Assembly (NCBI GenBank): GCA_951406725.2
Contig: OX597815.1
Coordinates: 43,586,001 to 43,650,000, forward strand
Direction: 5' to 3'
DNA: 64,000 bases
Source of the DNA: Octopus vulgaris
Taxonomy: Eukaryota
A model generated the notes under the pieces. That model was not told the DNA's origin. It ran no database searches and was given only the letters and a program-made list of their open reading frames with translations. The number at the start of each line of letters is the position of its first letter. Position 1 is the first letter of the stretch. The translations under genes were made by a program, and so were the position numbers. Below are positions 3,829 to 58,782 of the stretch, one piece after another.

Positions 3829-4565
<737 letters not shown>

Positions 4566-16049: not shown

Positions 16050-16340
16050 AAATTAACGTAAACATTGTACAACAGGAGTATGTTTCCGGAAGCGGATGTC
16101 AGCTAAGTTTTCAGCGAATCTGTCGGCTAGACGGCGGCCGGAGTGTCCAACATACAAAGACTTCCGAAGAGTACATTCTATGCAATATATGACGTTAGTA
16201 GGTGTGCATGAAAAAGCGTCTCGGGTGTGCACAATGCGTTGGTTAGTTTCAGTGAGGGAAGTGCGTTGGTGATGAAATGGCAGGAGTGGCCTGAGAACTG
16301 GAGCAAGAAAAGGACCCACGGTGGGCGGAAATGGGGGAGG
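16050..16340 (-). pseudogene. Penelope-like GIY-YIG endonuclease fragment (second lineage)
   Basis: RDAFSCTPTNVIYCIECTLRKSLYVGHSGRRLADRFAENLADIR, preceded by a Cys/His linker remnant. Confidence 0.85.
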
Positions 16341-17794
16341 GAAGGAGTGGCATAATATCATTGAACGTGGTGGATGGCTGAAATTGTAACGCGCTAAACA
16401 AAATATCCCTTGACGTTCTGAGTTCAAATCCCTCCTACATCTACTTTCCTGTCAGCTTTCCAAGCTCATAAAATATTCTTTTCCAGGCATGTGGTGAATG
16501 TCAGAAATCACGTCAGAAATCTTTATTACATTTATACATAGATCGTGGGTAGGAGAATCGATAGAAAGCGCCTATGAACATTTAAATTTCCCAAATATCT
16601 GCCATATGTACTTCATCCGCATGCATATTTTTCGTCATGGTTTCCCATGGCTTTTCTGTTGCTACTTTCCTTGAACCTATACTTCTTGTTAGTTTGTAAG
16701 GACTTTTATAGATATTCCATAATAAATATCTATTTGTATAACGGCACTGACGTAAATTGAGTAGAAGTTTAATATTCTGCCAATTTCCGATTTAGTTCTC
16801 TCCAAATATTGAGAAAATTCCAATCCATTTGGATAAAAAAAAAAACTTCTTTAATTTGCTTGAACGCTAGTATGAATATCCTGGCCTTTAACAAACGTAG
16901 AGCCTCATTCGATTAATTCTGATGTACCAAATAAGAGCTAAATTACTTTGAATTGATAATTGACTGTACTACTAGACGTGAGTAACCAAGCAGATATTCT
17001 TCAGGAACCTATTCCGCACTCCGTCTCGTATTTTAATCCCACATCCTCTAGTATTGTGCCGATCTCCACCCTCGAAATTTGTAGTCATGTGAGTTGCAAG
17101 GCGACCTCAGTAGTACTGGTCGCATGAAAAAAAAAATTCAAAAAAATAAAAAAGCAAGTAAACTGCTTGAAAGTAAGAAGGGAATAGAGCAGTAGAAATC
17201 ATGCCAAAGCAGATATTGGCGCACAGAGCAATCCTTAGACGCGTCTGATTCCATACCAGCATAAAACGCTAAATGATGATGTGGAGACGTTAAATGATGA
17301 TGTGGAGAAGGAGGAGGAACATGATAATATAAATACATTCTCACGTATATACTTATACATATACATACGTACACTCACAAGCAATAATTCATTTTTAAAA
17401 CTTAAAAAAGGATTTTAATTCATTTATTTTTAACCTACATAATTACCTGAAAGTATACAAGCTCGTCGCTATACAAGCTCGTCGGTCCAGTGTATTAGCA
17501 GAGGCATGAAACTTATAAGAGTTGGCATTTAAATCCCGTGTGTTTTAATATTCATATCTCATTGGATTGAGTTTTGAAACCACTAATAATGGAACAGTAC
17601 ACTATACATACATGGTGGTGGCTGCCCCCTCGTTATCGAGTATGGCCATTGCACGAAATCAACGTTGTTATCGTGCAATGCTTGTGCAAGAAGATATTTT
17701 TTAAAGTGAGGAAAGGCTGTGCACTGAGTCAATCCCACTCACTAAGCAACAGCAGCCATAACCCGAAAAGAAGAACAAGTCAACATCATCGGTA

Positions 17795-18891: not shown

Positions 18892-18932
<41 letters not shown>

Positions 18933-19115
18933 AAAGGGCTTAGTAAAATAAATTACTTCGCCGCATACTGAACTCATTAGAAATAGCAGCTAAAAAACTT
19001 TTTTAAAGCTATTTCTAATACTTAAAGAAAATCTCTCTCATATATAGCGCCTGCCTAATTCAACTCACAAAAGTTTGGGGGTAAGGACATTAAAAAATCA
19101 AATGCTAAGGTTATT

Positions 19116-19167
19116 TGAGTACGTACGTTTCAAGATTAGTCAAAACAACACTTCTATCTTCAGCTCA
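19116..19167 (-). ncRNA. Type I hammerhead ribozyme
   Basis: TGAG-CTGAAGA-TAGAAGTGTTGTTTTGACTAATCTT-GAAA-C(GTAC)G-TA^CTCA; stem I TGAG/CTCA; palindromic ACGTACGT stem III; imperfect stem II. Confidence 0.7.
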
Positions 19168-19293
19168 GAAATTCCTTGGTTTGGATTTGGAAACACTGAA
19201 AGTAAGAACATACCCTTTCGAAGATTCCCTTTCGAATCTTCGAAAGGGTATGTTCTTACTTTCAGTGTTTCCAAATCCAAACCAAGGAATTTC

Positions 19294-19343
19294 TGAGCTG
19301 AGATAGAAGTGTTGTTTGACTAATCTTGAAACGTACGTACTCA
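19294..19343 (+). ncRNA. Defective hammerhead (mirror copy)
   Basis: Same motif, but the core reads CTGAGA (1-nt deletion at N7). Confidence 0.6.
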
Positions 19344-19633
19344 AATAACCTTAGCATTTGATTTTTTAATGTCCTTACCCCAAACTTTTGTGAGTTGAAT
19401 TAGACATATATGAGAGAGATTTTCTTTAAGTATTAGAAATAGCTTTAAAAAGTTTTTTAGCTATTTCTAATGAGTTCAGTATGCGGCGAAGTAATTTATT
19501 TTACTAAGCCCTTTTATATAATGTAATAATTTGAATTCGCCTTAAATGGTCCCTTTGCATACTGAACACTTGGTGAAATTGATTAATAATTAATTAATTT
19601 TACCCTCAATTGTTGAAATTATATATATATATA

Positions 19634-19870
19634 TATAATATGTGATAATTATTCGGTAGCCATGGTAAAACTCCGAGTTTCGGATGTCGGGGGTGGAAAT
19701 CCACGCCGGTATAGTATAGAAGCATTTTTTTCGATAGCCCGATAACTGAAGAGGTGCCGGCGTGGGTTTACCATGTCTACCGAATAATTGTCACATATTA
19801 TATTTACAGATAAATTCCTCTATTTACATAATATCGAGGTCTCTTTCATTCTTTTGTTGTCTTGCCATTT
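19634..19870. mobile_element. Small fold-back element with hammerhead halves on opposite strands
   Basis: 35-bp outer inverted repeats (19634-19668 / 19767-19801) and inner CCACGCCGG/CCGGCGTGG; CTGAAGA on + at 19746, GAAACTCGGAGTT on - from 19681. Confidence 0.65.
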
Positions 19871-24875: not shown

Positions 24876-27256
24876 CAGGCAAATATAGATATAGATAAAG
24901 AAAAAAGAAAATAATCATTGCATATGATTCACATAAGTAGCATTAGATGCACAATTGTGTTTGTATCTATACATGTGTATGTATATGCGTGCAGATGAAG
25001 AGGTACGCTTTTTGCCTGCATCTGATATACTCTTGTCCTTTTTTAGCATTATATGTCTATACGAGATGCTTTCTTGGGACGAATATCGCATTTTTATGTG
25101 TTTTTACAGCATGTCCACGTTAAGTACGATATACAGAATGCTTCTTTGAAATAATACCGCTTGTGTCGCTAATAACAAAGTTTTATCTAGAAAAAATAAA
25201 TTATATCTTTAGATTCAATTATATTTTATTTCTAACAAGAATATAAGTTAACCACCTTCCATATTTCCAGTTAATTTCGGTTAGATCTCGTGGATTAAAA
25301 CCAAACAATTTTTTAATGCAATAATTTGAAGAAAGATCGTGGAAGTTAACAACTGTCACCACCGACTAATGAATGTATAAACTCAATAAATTTGATACTA
25401 ATTACAAAGATTGTGGTGGGGATGAAGAAAATTATCATCATAATTTTTATCTTAATAACTCGGCAAAATTGACACCTAGTAAAAGAATTGATGTTAATAT
25501 CCGACTACAGTCCAACTCATAATGCACAAAAAAAAACTTACATAGGAAATGATTTTTAACGATTATTTGTAACATAATCAGTAACCAACATAATATTTTC
25601 TGTAACTAAAAACAACGACGAATATTTTGAAAATGTTATCCCTAGGGTTTAATGCGCACGTCACCTTCAATATCTGTTTAGCTATAGACATACACAGCTA
25701 GTTAATCGGCATGTTTAAGATCCAGTCGATATCAAAGAGATTCAGCTCACAAAAGACTAAGGTAGACTGTGCACCGACCATGACGACCAGCTACTTCTAT
25801 ATTACTATTGAATTCACCAAGTAGCTGCAGCTATATGAAAGAAACCTTTGTTGTTTATGATTAGATATCTTAATGATATGCGATATATTGAAACACTACC
25901 AAAATGAACTCAGGAAATGTTTATATAACAACCAAAAGGAAATAGAAATAATACAGTCCTCGAATAAGTGAAGTACAAGAAATGTTTCCAGGTGCGCACA
26001 TATATTTACCATTTTGAATCTGAGACTTATGAGCAATCTAAGGCTGGTATACAGAAATTTGCAACTATAAATAATGATAATTTAAAAGATGCAGCGAAAG
26101 TTGTGAAAGAAGAATCTCATGGTAATTTTGTAGAGACAGTTTTTGTTAGCTTATCAATACTTCCCTCTAAAGACATTCTCCAATCGTGCAATATCAAACA
26201 AGAGGGAACGAAAATCTGTAGAATACATAAGTTTTAAGTTAAGAGATGACATGATTGCTCCATCGCTGCTCTCACGTTAAAGTGTGCTAATGGCGTTATT
26301 CTTAAATTATGGGTAATTCACACTTTGTATTGTCTCCTTCGATCAGAATAATTTTTGCACTTTTATCCTCATTCGTAAATGTTTGATATCATTTCTTTCA
26401 TCAATTGCAAAATAGATATGCGTGTGCTTTTGTTGTAGATTTTTTTCGTTCTATCGCTTCCTTTCTTTCTTTCTTTACTTGCTTCAGTCATTGGACTACG
26501 ACCACGCTAGAGTATCGCCTTGAAGGCCTTCAGTCGAGTCGAGTAGATCGACTCAATACTTATTTTAATGTCTGGTACATATTCTATCAGTCTATTTTGC
26601 CGTACAGCTAAGTTACAGAGACGTAATCCAACGCCGGCTGTCAAGCTGATTCTGGACAAACACAAGCACAAAGATATACCTACAGATACGACGGGCTTCC
26701 ACATATTTTCCGTGTAGCAAATTCCCGCGTATATTCCACTACATTCCTATATATTTCACAATATTCCACTATTTCTGTTTATATTCAAGTTACTGTGCGA
26801 TATCATGTATTCAGCCTAGGACTATAGTAGAAGACACTTGCCAAAGGTGCCGCACAGTAAGACTGAACCCGACACTACGTAATAGCAAAGCGTTGCATTA
26901 TTTGTTATTGACTGATTTTATAATGTTTTGCTTTTTAGCTGGGTGAACTTGGCACACTTCGTGTGTTCGTGTCTTCCACACGCTTTCCTATTTAGCATCT
27001 CTAGTTTGTTATCACAGCTTTCAAATAGTTTAAAATCATCATACACTGCTACTGACAGAAAGTGTAGAGAATTTGACAGTGGATATTCCTTTTATGTACA
27101 TTTTTACTTTGGATCCTATAAAGTCAATTTAACTTTTTATCTTACTTAAGGGCAATCATCGACATAGCAGATAAATATTGAATTGAACTGGTTATGTCCT
27201 TCGTTGAAAAATATTAGACCAAGGAAGAATTCGTTACAATCGATGAGGAAGATATA

Positions 27257-27424
27257 GAAGAAGAAGAAGAAGAAGAAGAAGAAGAAGAAGAAGAAGAAGA
27301 AGAAGAAGAAGAAGAAGAAGAAGAAGAAGAAGAAGAAGAAGAAGAAGAAGAAGAAGAAGAAGAAGAAGAAGAAGAAGAAGAAGAAGAAGAAGAAGAAGAA
27401 GAAGAAGAAGAAGAAGAAGAAGAA
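27257..27424 (+). repeat. (GAA)56 pure triplet tract
   Basis: 168 uninterrupted nt, followed by (GAC)4. Confidence 0.95.
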
Positions 27425-27663
27425 GACGACGACGACGTGATGGAGGGAGAAGAGGGGAAGAATAACATCGAAAAGAAAAAGAGAAATATTTGGATAAAGA
27501 AGATATAGAACTTTTCGTTTGAGCATCTGTTTCCAGTCACTGATATCGCGTTGTGACTCTGGTCAGGAGGCGTATTTGCTTTATAAATAAGGTTAGAAGC
27601 CACTGCAAATGCAGTGGTTTTATATGGAATGTATTACCCCTATGCCCACAAAATAGCATCTGC

Positions 27664-30463: not shown

Positions 30464-30760
30464 GTGGCGAGCTGACAGAATTGTTAGCACGCCGGGCAAA
30501 ATGCCTAGCATTATTTCGTCTGCTGCTACGTTCTGAGTTCAAATTCCACCGAGGTCAACTTTGCCTTTCATCCTTTCGGGGTCGATTAAATAAGTACCAG
30601 TTACGCACTGAGGTCGATATAATCGACTTAATCCGTACGTCTGTCCTTGTTTGTTTCCTCTGTGTGTAGCCCCTTGTGGGCAGTAAAGAAATAGGTATTT
30701 AATATTCTGAGTTCAAATTCCACCATAGTCGACTTTGCCCTTTATCCTTTGGGGCCGAAA
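30464..30760 (+). mobile_element. SINE family A plus partial second unit
   Basis: GGTGGCGAGCTGACAGAA head; tail GCAGTAAAGAAATAGGTATTT runs into a second TTCTGAGTTCAAATTCC. Confidence 0.88.
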
Positions 30761-31344: not shown

Positions 31345-31593
31345 TGTGTGTATAATGAAAAAGTGTTTTCTAAATAACTTTAAACAATACACCTGTTATT
31401 ATAATCTGTTGTGTAATTCATTTAATTACTACTACGTTTCCTTATGAATTTGAATCTCCCGGGCGTTAACTTTACCCTTCATACTTCTAGTTGAATATAA
31501 CCAATTACTCTCGTCGACATCGAAGGATTCTAAATGTTAATAAATTACAATAAATTAACAAGTTATAAATTACTGTATTGAAGTTAATAATTA

Positions 31594-31676
<83 letters not shown>

Positions 31677-31829
31677 CGCATATTTGCCATTTGAATATGG
31701 CTAACCCCTAAGGGTGGATGCTACTGTAGTTTGTAGCCCCAGGAAGATATCTCCTCCAGCTGGCTATAGACACACTATCTGTGTCCTCTCAGTATTTGTG
31801 AAGGGAAGTCATTCTCCCCGTCTTCAATT

Positions 31830-31890
31830 CATGATACACACGTACCCGAGTTTCAAGATGTTTACCTTTCATCAGCGTGTGACAATCATG
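31830..31890 (-). ncRNA. Type I hammerhead ribozyme
   Basis: CATGAT-TGT-CACACG-CTGATGA-AAGGT(AAAC)ATCTT-GAAA-C(TCGG)G-TA^CGTGTG-T-ATCATG. Confidence 0.9.
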
Positions 31891-32154
31891 GTTGTCGACG
31901 AGAAGTCAGCTCCTTTCACAAATACATATACAGCTGGATGAGATATCTTCCTGGGGCTACAAACTACAGTAGCATCCTCCATTAGGGGTTAGCCATATTC
32001 AAATGGCAAATATGCGTCACGATGTGTTACCGCTACTGTTTATAACTCGCTCTGAGATTTATCATTGTTTGATTTCACTTTTTCAATATCAGTGTCAATC
32101 GACACTGGATAAAGTTTATGTATTTGTGAAGGGAGCTGACTTCTCGTCGACAAC

Positions 32155-32215
32155 CATGATTGTCACACGCTGATGATAGGTAAACACCTTGAAACTCGGG
32201 TCCGTGTGTATCATG
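32155..32215 (+). ncRNA. Type I hammerhead ribozyme
   Basis: CATGAT-TGT-CACACG-CTGATGA-T-AGGT(AAAC)ACCT-T-GAAA-C(TCGG)G-TC^CGTGTG-T-ATCATG; predicted cleavage after 32202. Confidence 0.88.
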
Positions 32216-32415
32216 AGTTGAAGACGGGGAGGATGACTTCCCTTCACAAATACTGAGAAGACACAGATAGTGTGTCTATAGCCAGCTGGAGGAGATATCT
32301 TCCTGGGGCTACAAACTACAGTAGCATCCACCCTTAGGGGTTAGCCATATTCAAATAGCAAATATGCGTCACGATGTGTTACCGCTACCGTTTATAACTC
32401 GCTCTGAGATTTATC

Positions 32416-32453
<38 letters not shown>

Positions 32454-32468
32454 CATACATACATACAT

Positions 32469-32571
<103 letters not shown>

Positions 32572-32578
32572 CCAATGC

Positions 32579-33120
32579 ATGAAAGTTGCTGGCATGTTTA
32601 TTCCCAAAGAACAGAACTCACGCACCGTCAATGTCAATCAGTTCAGATCAATGTCACTTCTCAAAGTTGAGGAAAAAAATCTCATTTATTGCAGTAAGGT
32701 AAACTAAATATTTCACAGATAACAAATATCGGTGCTTGCAGTTAATATTGATACCGAAGCTCCTATGTCTTTTGCAGATTATAATATCAGAACTAGTACA
32801 GGGGAAATAGTGGAGGCCAAAATAAAGCACGCAATGCAGTGGTTGCATATTTTACTTGGTCTGGTCTCACTATTTTTGCTCTCTAATATCGCCTGGTAAA
32901 GCTGAATTTACCCCTTAAGTCGACCGTGGAGAAGTACGAGATCGGAAAAGTAAGACTCTTGTATATTTGAGAACTCAAGAGACTGACTTTGTGACAAATA
33001 ACAAGCTGCATGCAAATCAACGAGTGGGGACTAGGTTTGACGGTGTAGTGGACAAAGTCAAAATGGAAAACAAAAGGATATGGTAATACAGGGTAGGATA
33101 CGACCTTCCGTTCTTTAATA
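32579..33120 (+). pseudogene. HERO/R2-superfamily non-LTR RT fragments
   Basis: GMFIPKEQNS..QFRSMSLLKVE and KLNLPLKSTVEKYEIGKVRL, with stops, frameshifts and deletions. Confidence 0.7.
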
Positions 33121-33295: not shown

Positions 33296-33676
33296 GAAGC
33301 ACTCCGTCGGTTACGACAACGAGGGTTCCGGTTGATCCGATCAACGGAACAGCCTGCTCGTGAAATTAACGTGTAAGTGGCTGAGCACTCCACAGACACG
33401 TGTACCCTTAACGTAGTTCTCGGGGATATTCAGCGTGACACAGAGAGTGACAAGGCCGGCCCTTTGAAATACAGGTACAACAGAAACAGGAAGTAAGAGT
33501 GAGAGAAAGTTGTGGTGAAAGAGTACAGCAGGGATCACCACCATCCCTGCCGGAGCCTCGTGGAGCTTTAGGTGTTTTCGCTCAATAAACACTCACAACG
33601 CCCGGTCTGGGAATCGAAACCGCGATCCTACGACCGCGAGTCCGCTGCCCTAACCACTGGGCCATTGCGCCTCCAC
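33296..33676 (-). mobile_element. SINE family C, well preserved
   Basis: GTGGAGGCGCAATGGCCCAGTGGTTAGGGCAGCGGACTCGCGGTCGTAGGATCGCGGTTTCGATTCCCAG tRNA-like head; tail GAGAACTACGTTAAGGG...GTAACCGACGGAGTGC. Confidence 0.92.
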
Positions 33677-35965: not shown

Positions 35966-36238
35966 TGGCAATCCGTCGGTTACGACGAAGAGGGTTCCAG
36001 TTGATCCTATTCATAGACACGTGTGCCCTTAACGTAGTTCTCAGGAAGATTCTGCATGACACAAAGCGTGACAAATCCGGCCCTTTAATATACAGATATT
36101 ACGCATTTTTGCCAGCTGAGTGGACTGGAGTAACGTGAAAACAAAAGTCCCTTACACAAAAAAAAAACATCACGTCGATGGGAATTGAACTCACGATCGT
36201 TAGCCGAATTACCTGACAACTAAGCCACGCGCCTTCAC
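35966..36238 (-). mobile_element. SINE family C variant, internally deleted
   Basis: GTGAAGGCGCGTGGCTTAG head, ACTCCAGTCCACTCAGCTGGCAAAAATG domain, shared C tail. Confidence 0.8.
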
Positions 36239-53264: not shown

Positions 53265-53300
<36 letters not shown>

Positions 53301-53352
53301 TCACACACAGACACACACATATATACATTCACACACACATAACGATATACAC

Positions 53353-53473
<121 letters not shown>

Positions 53474-58029: not shown

Positions 58030-58782
58030 TCCCCTTCACGATGTAACTAAAAACCAATATAGTTAAATCTATAATGAAACTTATATGTAAACACTTCAAT
58101 ATGAATACAAAATACCCAGAGATCTTTAGCAATAAAATTAGAGTAGACCACAACATAACTAGCAACGTAGCTACTATTATAGCCTATATCAAAAATAAAT
58201 AGCCAGACGCCTTCTATGAAACTAGAAAGAATAACAATAAAGAGCACAACAACCAATCGATTGATATAATAAATGATCCCCCAAATAACGCGCCCTCTAA
58301 AAATTCGGACAACCACCTTATAAATGATAATCCCCCCCCCCACCATATCATAGGCACAGATAATCTTACTAATCTATGTGGTAGCAGAGATAAAATTCTT
58401 GTGAATTCTTGAATATATGTAAAGCTAAAAACATAATCTATCAATGTGATGTATTCTCGAATAATTACAAGAAAACTTATATAGGAACAACTAAAAATGA
58501 AATGAAACTTAGCTATAATTCCCATCACTCATGTTTCAGAAATAGAAATAAGGCTAACTCTACCAGATTATGTAGTTGCATCTGGGGACTGAAAGACAAT
58601 GACATTAATTATAGATTAGAATGGCGTATCCTAGCCAAAATATCTTCATATAATGTTAAAAATAATCGCTGTAAATTATGCATAAATGAGAAGTTCTTCA
58701 TTTTAATGGCCAAATCAGAATTACTTAATAAACGAGACGGGAAATAAATACGTTTACATAAAGAACAATTCTTATTCTTTAT
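58030..58782 (+). pseudogene. Penelope-like linker plus GIY-YIG fragment (third lineage)
   Basis: KTNIVKSIMKLICKHF, NIIYQCDV, KTYIGTT, STRLCSCIWGLKD, EWRILAK, RCKLCINEKFFIL, LLNKR. Confidence 0.88.

What the first reader, a model, noticed from the sequence alone, without database searches (positions are those of the whole stretch)
32120..32253. Hammerhead mounted on a 134-nt strand-specific RNA rod
Stem I continues outward: CACACG/CGTGTG, a UGU/U internal loop, CATGAT/ATCATG, CAAC/GTTG, CTTCTCGTC/GACGGGGAG and a perfect 15-bp GTATTTGTGAAGGGA/TCCCTTCACAAATAC. The middle helix needs three G.U pairs, which work only on the ribozyme-sense strand, arguing for selected RNA structure rather than DNA inversion. 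Both genomic copies start at the base of this rod. The stem I internal loop and AAAC loop II are placed as expected for the tertiary contact of fast natural HHRs.
Basis: partly seen in the sequence, partly recalled or inferred. Interest (0 to 1): 0.8.

Follow-up and report, generated by a model that had tools for sequence, protein, structure and literature searches.

The report
Hammerhead ribozyme in a short retroelement
The hairpin is real and carries a complete self-cleaving hammerhead ribozyme, but it is one decaying copy of an already known kind of small animal mobile element (a Penelope-type "retrozyme"), so it is a sound catch rather than a new kind of thing.

Summary
It encloses a complete type I hammerhead at 32164-32208, with predicted cleavage after 32202. 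A second copy lies inverted at 31792-31925.

Three corrections:
- The middle helix has two G.U pairs, not three.
- The antisense strand also folds well (z -5.8). The strand bias is 11.4 kcal/mol in one copy but 2.9 in the other.
- The six differences between the two rods include no compensatory pair.

The rod is one domain of a roughly 352-nt non-coding unit. The locus is arranged as inverted 5'-truncated copy, then partial upstream copy, then full unit, with (TA)n on both outer flanks. That is the published insertion signature of Penelope-like elements. The unit size, low GC and canonical 6-bp/4-bp hammerhead match metazoan non-LTR retrozymes.

The two inverted arms would pair into a 262-bp duplex in any read-through transcript. 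I found no relatives outside the window, so covariation could not be tested.

Verdict: a new member of a known kind, of modest interest.

The parts
31598..31671 (.). (TA)n microsatellite on the left outer flank of the composite insertion
31670..31931 (-). Inverted, 5'-truncated copy of the unit (rod, short hairpin and the first 98 nt of segment X). It is 96% identical to 32114-32375.
   Evidence: (I1)
31792..31925 (-). Rod of the inverted copy (134 nt). Sense fold -49.0 kcal/mol, antisense -46.1.
31837..31881 (-). Type I hammerhead of the inverted copy. The core is intact, the cleavage triplet is GUA, and helix II has 5 bp.
   Evidence: no Rfam hit at E<=10
31926..32066 (+). Segment X, upstream partial copy (pseudo-LTR-like direct repeat of 32278-32418, 95-96% identical)
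   Evidence: (D4)
32067..32113 (+). 47-nt segment between X and the rod, with a small 7-bp hairpin. It is either the 5' part of the 352-nt unit or a junction 'tail'.
   Evidence: interpretation inferred
32120..32253 (+). The 134-nt rod: extended helix I carrying the hammerhead at its tip
32164..32208 (+). Type I hammerhead. Helix I is 6 bp. Helix II is 4 bp plus a U.U at its base, with loop AAAC. Helix III is 2 bp with loop UCGG. Cleavage is predicted between 32202 and 32203.
   Evidence: (Rfam RF00163, 17.3 bits, E 0.043, full-length match)
32254..32277 (+). Linker holding a 7-bp hairpin directly after the rod
32278..32418 (+). Segment X of the full unit, a branched, moderately structured domain
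32418..32449 (.). (TA)n microsatellite on the right outer flank, followed by further microsatellites up to about 32570

Best explanation
The rod is the hammerhead arm of a short (about 352 nt), non-coding, hammerhead-bearing retroelement of the metazoan 'non-LTR retrozyme' kind. Such elements are thought to be copied by the machinery of Penelope-like elements (PLEs).

Shown:
- A complete type I hammerhead sits at the tip of a roughly 50-bp interrupted helix I.
- The unit has no ORF, 42-43% GC and a highly self-paired fold.
- The locus consists of an inverted 5'-truncated copy, a partial upstream copy and a full unit. It is bounded by (TA)n on both sides.

Inferred from the published life cycle of such elements:
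- In an active array, multimeric transcripts cut themselves after the GUC. They may do so as hammerhead dimers, because helix III is only 2 bp and its sequence can pair with itself over 8 bp.
[quoted passage not shown] This favours closure into a circle of about 352 nt by a host tRNA ligase.
- The alternative pairing of part of the core (6.3 kcal/mol more stable) keeps the closed circle from recutting.
- Reverse transcription of a circular or uncut template gives copies longer than one unit. This fits the 1.4-unit + strand segment, which carries an uncut hammerhead.

This particular locus is an old copy, with about 4% divergence between its parts and one hammerhead per strand. It cannot release a monomer by itself. 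Any transcript spanning both arms would fold into a 262-bp duplex.
For: Hammerhead:
- Core, helices and cleavage site are present.
- None was found in 300 simulated windows.

Rod and whole-unit folds:
- (352 nt, -120.1 kcal/mol, z -7.0).

Architecture:
- One search gives I1 (262-nt arms, 96%) and D4 (141-nt direct repeat with 352-nt spacing). Searches support these.
- (TA)n lies on both flanks.
- No ORF with a Pfam match lies within about 4 kb.
- GC is 0.42-0.43.

Literature:
- Metazoan retrozymes are 170-400 nt tandem repeats with type I hammerheads, under 50% GC, highly self-paired, and circularised by RtcB. Mussel units are 350-390 bp. The axolotl HHR_Amex2 has a 2-bp helix III plus tetraloop and a U.U at the base of helix II (PMC7229834).
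- PLE insertions form partial tandems plus an adjacent inverted 5'-truncated copy, and are biased to microsatellites including (TA)n (PMC8557442).
- Canonical metazoan hammerhead geometry, dimer action, and paired motifs on opposite strands 100-700 bp apart are described in PMC4209133.
- Retrozymes are related to PLE pseudo-LTRs, and solo monomers are common (bioRxiv 10.64898/2026.07.22.740005).

Other:
- Helix III self-pairing gives -9.5 kcal/mol.
- The three X copies are mutually about 96% identical, which is consistent with a single insertion event.
Against: - Only 1.4 units and one hammerhead per strand are present. The defining tandem array is not seen here.
- No other family member could be retrieved, so copy number, unit boundaries and covariation are unknown.
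- The Rfam score is below threshold for the + copy, and the - copy gives no hit.
- The usual G10.1-C11.1 pair is absent.
- No intact PLE is in the window. There is only a sub-threshold GIY-YIG fragment 16 kb away.
- Self-cleavage, circles and ligation are inferred from relatives, not observed.
Confidence: 0.62

Rival explanations
1. The copies are heavily 5'-truncated ends of an autonomous Penelope-like element (solo pseudo-LTR pieces), not a separate non-autonomous family. The hammerhead is the element's own pseudo-LTR ribozyme.
For: - PLE insertions are often strongly 5'-truncated.
- They form partial tandems with an inverted truncated copy.
- They carry hammerheads in their pseudo-LTRs and favour microsatellites.
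- This architecture is exactly what is seen here.
Against: - PLE hammerheads are described as 'minimal' variants with a long helix II, a short helix I and a poorly defined loop 1. This motif has the canonical 6-bp/4-bp geometry reported for retrozymes.
- The direct-repeat spacing is 352 nt, not kilobases.
- No reverse-transcriptase or endonuclease piece adjoins it.
Confidence: 0.2
2. A SINE-like, polymerase-III-type short retroposon that carries a hammerhead, as described for the Sm-alpha repeat of Schistosoma. It would be dispersed as single copies by a LINE.
For: - The element is short and non-coding.
- It occurs here as isolated copies, not in an array.
- Hammerhead-bearing SINE-like repeats are known (PMC6155905).
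Against: - No tRNA-like part was detected in the window.
- There is no A-rich tail. Both copies end in (TA)n.
- The inverted-plus-partial-tandem layout is the PLE signature, not the LINE/SINE one.
Confidence: 0.05
3. A DNA-level palindrome (a foldback or MITE-like hairpin, or a local inverted duplication). The hammerhead match would be coincidental, and the G.U pairs would be ordinary decay.
For: - Both strands fold well as RNA and almost equally as DNA.
- There are no compensatory changes.
- A second long palindrome exists in the window.
Against: - All invariant core positions, three helices and an allowed cleavage triplet are present in both copies.
- The descriptor gave 0 hits in 300 simulated windows.
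- The Rfam type I model aligns end to end.
- All three differences between the copies that fall inside the hammerhead sit at tolerated positions.
Confidence: 0.04
4. At this locus the biologically relevant RNA is not the rod. It is the 262-bp duplex formed by the two inverted arms in a read-through transcript, which would be a hairpin-RNA source of small RNAs or an RNA-editing substrate directed against the family.
For: The 706-nt span 31670-32375 folds into one near-perfect duplex that absorbs both rods and both hammerheads (-539.7 kcal/mol, z -33.9).
Against: - There is no evidence that the locus is transcribed.
- Such inverted copies are a routine by-product of PLE-type insertion.
- This reading explains the locus but not the origin of the rod or the ribozyme.
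Confidence: 0.1

Closest known systems
Metazoan non-LTR retrozymes (Cervera & de la Pena 2020, PMC7229834), for example the 350-390-bp mussel repeats and the axolotl Rtz_353 with HHR_Amex2
   Same: - A type I hammerhead sits inside a non-coding unit of about 350 nt, with low GC and a highly self-paired predicted RNA.
- Helix III is 2 bp capped by a tetraloop.
- There is a U.U at the base of helix II, as described for HHR_Amex2.
- Some mussel circles also have the core blocked by self-pairing.
   Different: - Only 1.4 units with a single same-strand hammerhead are present, not an array.
- No sequence comparison with published families was possible.
- Expression and circularity are unknown.
Newt/salamander satellite 2 'extended hammerhead'
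   Same: The hammerhead's activity as a single motif depends on an internally looped extension of helix I that is compatible with a particular loop on helix II (review PMC6155905). Here too, helix I continues past an internal loop.
   Different: The extension here is much longer, with about 50 bp paired over 134 nt. Its role in catalysis is untested.
Penelope-like element pseudo-LTRs with minimal hammerheads (Cervera & de la Pena 2014, PMC4209133; Craig et al. 2021, PMC8557442)
   Same: - The insertion architecture matches: a partial tandem, an adjacent inverted 5'-truncated copy and microsatellite flanks.
- The hammerheads lie on opposite strands a few hundred bp apart.
   Different: - There is no RT/GIY-YIG ORF.
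- The hammerhead is canonical, not of the minimal PLE type.
Plant LTR retrozymes and hammerhead viroids (Avsunviroidae)
   Same: The ribozyme is embedded in a stable self-paired structure, and the catalytic core is masked in the ground-state fold.
   Different: - Those carry type III hammerheads.
- Plant retrozymes have LTR/PBS/PPT features and are 600-1000 nt long.
- Viroids have no DNA copy.

Membership tests
Hammerhead ribozyme, type I | Conserved core: CUGANGA before helix II and GAAA after it | tested here: met
   Both copies carry it.
Hammerhead ribozyme, type I | A15.1-U16.1 pair and a non-G nucleotide at the cleavage site | tested here: met
   GUC in the + copy and GUA in the - copy.
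Hammerhead ribozyme, type I | Three helices around the core, with helix I open-ended | tested here: met
   Helix I is 6 bp, helix II is 4-5 bp, and helix III is 2 bp plus a 4-nt loop. None was found in 300 simulated windows.
Hammerhead ribozyme, type I | Reaches the Rfam RF00163 gathering score (34 bits) | tested here: not met
   The + copy scores 17.3 bits with E 0.043 in a 76-nt search. The whole window gives nothing at gathering threshold. The - copy gives nothing at E<=10.
Hammerhead ribozyme, type I | G10.1-C11.1 pair at the base of helix II (typical, not absolute) | tested here: not met
   The + copy has U.U and the - copy has A-U. The same U.U is reported for the axolotl HHR_Amex2.
Hammerhead ribozyme, type I | Canonical metazoan geometry: 6-bp helix I up to loop 1, 4-bp helix II, and a short helix III with a self-complementary loop region | tested here: met
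   One search gives the geometry and the definition. The helix III region pairs with itself over 8 bp if G.U pairs are allowed.
Hammerhead ribozyme, type I | Loop 1-loop 2 tertiary contact and actual self-cleavage | not testable with these tools
   No 3D or kinetic tool was available. Only the placement of the loops could be checked.
Metazoan non-LTR retrozyme | Type I hammerhead inside a non-coding repeat unit of about 170-400 nt with GC below 50% | tested here: met
   The direct-repeat spacing is 352 nt (D4). GC is 0.42-0.43. No ORF gave a family match.
Metazoan non-LTR retrozyme | Head-to-tail arrays with at least two hammerheads on one strand | tested here: not met
   There is one hammerhead per strand and 1.4 units on the + strand. 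Solo or partial copies are reported as common derivatives.
Metazoan non-LTR retrozyme | Highly self-paired predicted RNA | tested here: met
   The 352-nt unit folds at -120.1 kcal/mol with z -7.0.
Metazoan non-LTR retrozyme | Expressed as linear and circular unit-length RNAs | not testable with these tools
   No transcriptome of the source organism was available.
Metazoan non-LTR retrozyme | Coexistence with Penelope-like elements in the genome | tested here: inconclusive
   An ORF at 16053-16427 (-) matches Pfam GIY-YIG at E 0.007, with 17.0 bits against a cut-off of 22.6. No RT piece was found.
Penelope-like element insertion (architecture) | Partial tandem (pseudo-LTR) plus an adjacent inverted 5'-truncated copy | tested here: met
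   (D4, I1, I4).
Penelope-like element insertion (architecture) | Insertion into or next to microsatellites | tested here: met
   (TA)n lies at 31598-31671 and at 32418-32449.
Penelope-like element (autonomous) | ORF with reverse transcriptase and GIY-YIG endonuclease between the repeats | tested here: not met
   No such ORF piece lies within about 4 kb on either side.

The most novel reading that the evidence does not exclude
The unusually long (about 50 bp) helix I may be a selected two-state device, not a by-product. During transcription of arrays the hammerhead would cut, probably as a dimer through the self-complementary helix III. Afterwards the rod would clamp the two ends as a nick for ligation. 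It would also re-pair part of the core so that the circle is locked against recutting. This would be a built-in cleavage/ligation switch in an animal retrozyme family that has not been catalogued. [quoted passage not shown]
Probability: 0.12. Interest if true: 0.5.

Novelty: new member of a known kind. Interest (0 to 1): 0.28.

Why it matters
If the family is active in the source species, it would add one more lineage in which small ribozyme-made circular RNAs are produced. It would also give an example in which self-pairing masks the hammerhead core, as in plant retrozymes and viroids. Published metazoan retrozymes mostly leave the core free. For genome annotation, the result shows three things:
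- The region is a retroelement insertion, not a gene or a regulatory RNA.
- Rfam's gathering threshold misses this kind of hammerhead.
- The locus can form a 262-bp duplex RNA that could feed small-RNA or editing pathways.

None of this changes current understanding of hammerheads.

Tried and rejected
- **Rfam at gathering threshold over the window:** no match. A 2.5-kb permissive search returned only microsatellite-driven microRNA look-alikes at 32400-32600, which I reject as artefacts of (CT)n(TA)n(GA)n.
- **Search for family members:**
  - blastn of the unit against the window found only the copies described.
  - The 71-aa spurious ORF across the rod had no homologues in the protein collection.
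  - Two metagenome scans and two viral scans with hammerhead patterns gave 0 hits.
  - One scan of the bacterial/archaeal genome collection gave a single hit, in a 58%-GC coding region of a Verrucomicrobiota MAG with no helix II. I reject it as chance.
- **Literature full-text search** for sequence strings taken from the window: nothing. The supplement of PMC7229834 also gave nothing.
- **Host identification:** exact look-ups of two window ORFs and protein searches with the two endonuclease-like ORFs all failed. The host remains unidentified. It is evidently a eukaryote rich in microsatellites.
- **Failed script:** I replaced it with the tool's shuffles and a Markov simulation.
- **Rejected readings:** I considered a tRNA-derived SINE, an autonomous PLE, and a chance hammerhead in a DNA palindrome. 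See the rival explanations.

Full report
**1. The observation**

- a perfect 15-bp basal helix
- a 9-bp helix
- 4-bp and 6-bp helices separated by a bulged A
- a UGU/U internal loop
- the 6-bp helix I of a hammerhead

The energy is -62.4 kcal/mol. Dinucleotide shuffles give -33.5 +/- 3.7 (z -7.8).

The tip carries CUGAUGA, a 4-bp helix II with loop AAAC, GAAA, a 2-bp helix III with loop UCGG, and GUC. Cleavage is therefore predicted after 32202.

Rfam's type I model aligns end to end, but at only 17.3 bits against a gathering score of 34 (E 0.043 in a 76-nt search). The whole-window search at gathering threshold found nothing.

A helix-aware descriptor finds exactly two hammerheads in the window, this one and an inverted twin at 31837-31881 (-). 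It finds none in 300 simulated windows. The motif is not a chance match.

**2.

- The 9-bp helix has two G.U pairs, not three.
- The antisense RNA also folds far better than chance, at -51.0 kcal/mol (z -5.8).
- As DNA the two strands are almost equal, at -28.2 and -25.6.
- In the second copy (rod at 31792-31925, minus strand) the sense advantage shrinks to 2.9 kcal/mol.

The two rods differ at six positions:
- two lie in helix II
- one lies at the cleavage nucleotide, and both states are allowed
- one lies in an internal loop
- two weaken rod helices in the minus copy

None is compensatory.

The rod has diverged at least as much as the rest of the arm, with 6 differences in 134 nt against 4 in 128 nt. 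This locus therefore shows no purifying selection on the rod.

The strand-specific argument rests on two G.U pairs. No opposing A.C juxtapositions were seen on inspecting the rod's internal loops in the fold; this was not computed.

In the minimum-energy fold, four bases of the core pair with the helix III region. The cleavage-competent fold is 6.3 kcal/mol higher.

**3. Context**

The rod is not free-standing. The layout is as follows:

| Segment | Coordinates | Strand |
|---|---|---|
| (TA)n flank | 31598-31671 | . |
| Inverted copy of rod, hairpin and part of X | 31670-31931 | - |
| X, upstream partial copy | 31926-32066 | + |
| 47-nt segment | 32067-32113 | + |
| Rod | 32120-32253 | + |
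| Small hairpin | 32254-32277 | + |
| X | 32278-32418 | + |
| (TA)n flank | 32418-32449 | . |

- The X-to-X spacing is 352 nt.
- The three X copies are mutually about 96% identical. This fits one composite insertion event followed by neutral decay.
- The 352-nt unit has 42-43% GC.
- It has no ORF with any family match.
- It folds into separate domains, the rod being one of them (-120.1 kcal/mol, z -7.0).
- There are no further copies in the window.

**4. What it is**

The published description of PLE insertions matches the architecture point by point (PMC8557442). It lists strong 5' truncation, a partial upstream copy forming a pseudo-LTR, an inverted 5'-truncated copy immediately adjacent, and a bias for microsatellites including (TA)n.

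The published description of metazoan non-LTR retrozymes matches the unit (PMC7229834). It lists type I hammerheads inside non-coding repeats of 170-400 nt with GC below 50%. It also describes highly self-paired RNAs that are cut by the ribozyme and closed into circles by a tRNA ligase.

Further matches from the literature:
- The hammerhead geometry (6-bp helix I, 4-bp helix II, 1-2-bp helix III with a small self-complementary loop) is what PMC4209133 calls the canonical metazoan type.
- The combination of a 2-bp helix III plus tetraloop with a U.U at the base of helix II is described for the axolotl HHR_Amex2, in a 350-bp unit.
- A 2026 preprint links animal retrozymes to PLE pseudo-LTRs and reports many solo derivatives.

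I therefore read the finding as one old copy of such an element.

The main rival is that it is merely the truncated end of a coding PLE. It cannot be excluded without the rest of the genome. It is disfavoured by the canonical hammerhead, which is not of the 'minimal' PLE type, and by the 352-nt period.

**5. How it most likely works**

These steps are inferred from relatives.
- In an active array, multimeric transcripts self-cleave. They may do so as dimers, because the helix III region can pair with itself over 8 bp (-9.5 kcal/mol).
- In the released monomer, the two halves of the rod re-pair. The 5'-OH and cyclic-phosphate ends are then held as a nick in a roughly 50-bp helix. This arrangement should favour ligation.
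- The alternative core pairing would then disfavour recutting.
- Both genomic copies contain an uncut hammerhead, and the + segment is 1.4 units long. This is what reverse transcription of a circular or uncut multimeric template would give.
- The need for an internally looped extension of helix I, matched to the loop on helix II, for single-motif activity is known from newt hammerheads (PMC6155905).

**6. This locus**

With one hammerhead per strand, the locus cannot release a unit. A transcript spanning both arms folds into a 262-bp near-perfect duplex that absorbs both rods (-539.7 kcal/mol). If the locus is transcribed at all, it is more likely a source of duplex RNA than of ribozyme-made circles.

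**7. Limits**

- No relative was found in any collection available.
- The host could not be identified.
- Cleavage, circularity and tertiary contacts are untested.

**8. Slip**

Nothing was passed to a tool, saved or used, and nothing was deleted (note).

**9. Verdict**

This is a genuine hammerhead on a genuine extended helix I, belonging to a known class (PLE-type or retrozyme short retroelement). It is a new member of a known kind, of modest interest.

Noticed in passing
window 18922-19525: A roughly 600-bp near-perfect palindrome (arms 96-100% complementary) with (TA)n runs nearby at 18894-18925 and 19620-19637. Its minus strand carries a hammerhead-like motif at 19116-19167. The motif has the features described for PLE 'minimal' hammerheads: a 4-bp helix I, an unpaired base before helix II, and a 1-bp helix III with a palindromic tetraloop. 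The twin on the + arm (about 19295-19344) has a damaged core (one change). The motif is thermodynamically weak (z +1.7) and gets no Rfam hit, so it is only a motif-level resemblance.
   Followed up: partly
window 16053-16427 (-): A 124-aa ORF whose C-terminal part matches Pfam GIY-YIG below threshold (E 0.007; 17.0 bits against a cut-off of 22.6). It may be a remnant of a Penelope-like endonuclease, about 2.7 kb from the palindrome above. No reverse-transcriptase piece was found among neighbouring ORFs, and no homologues or exact matches exist in the protein collections. The breaks were not counted.
   Followed up: partly
window 58409-58747 (+): A 112-aa ORF that looked endonuclease-like by eye. 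It has no Pfam match and no homologues, so the impression is unsupported.
   Followed up: yes
window 30470-30640, 30705-30754, 31442-31491: Three copies (64-100% identical over 50 nt) of a short interspersed repeat just upstream of the finding. It is probably a SINE of the host. ARAGORN finds no tRNA gene in the window.
   Followed up: no
whole window, e.g. 1404-2528 (TACA)n, 3829-4259 (CTAT)n, 27256-27426 (AGA)n, 53266-53469 (TA)n: About 10% of the window is perfect microsatellite. These tracts produce most of the long 'ORFs', which have no Pfam matches. The window has 36% GC and no evident protein-coding gene.
   Followed up: partly
window 32449-32593: A compound microsatellite, (CT)n(TA)n(GA)n, is self-complementary. 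It draws sub-threshold matches to a dozen microRNA families in Rfam. These are artefacts of low complexity.
   Followed up: yes
window 33299-33329 and 35968-35998: A 31-nt direct repeat (90% identical) 2.7 kb apart, downstream of the finding. It may belong to another interspersed repeat (D6).
   Followed up: no
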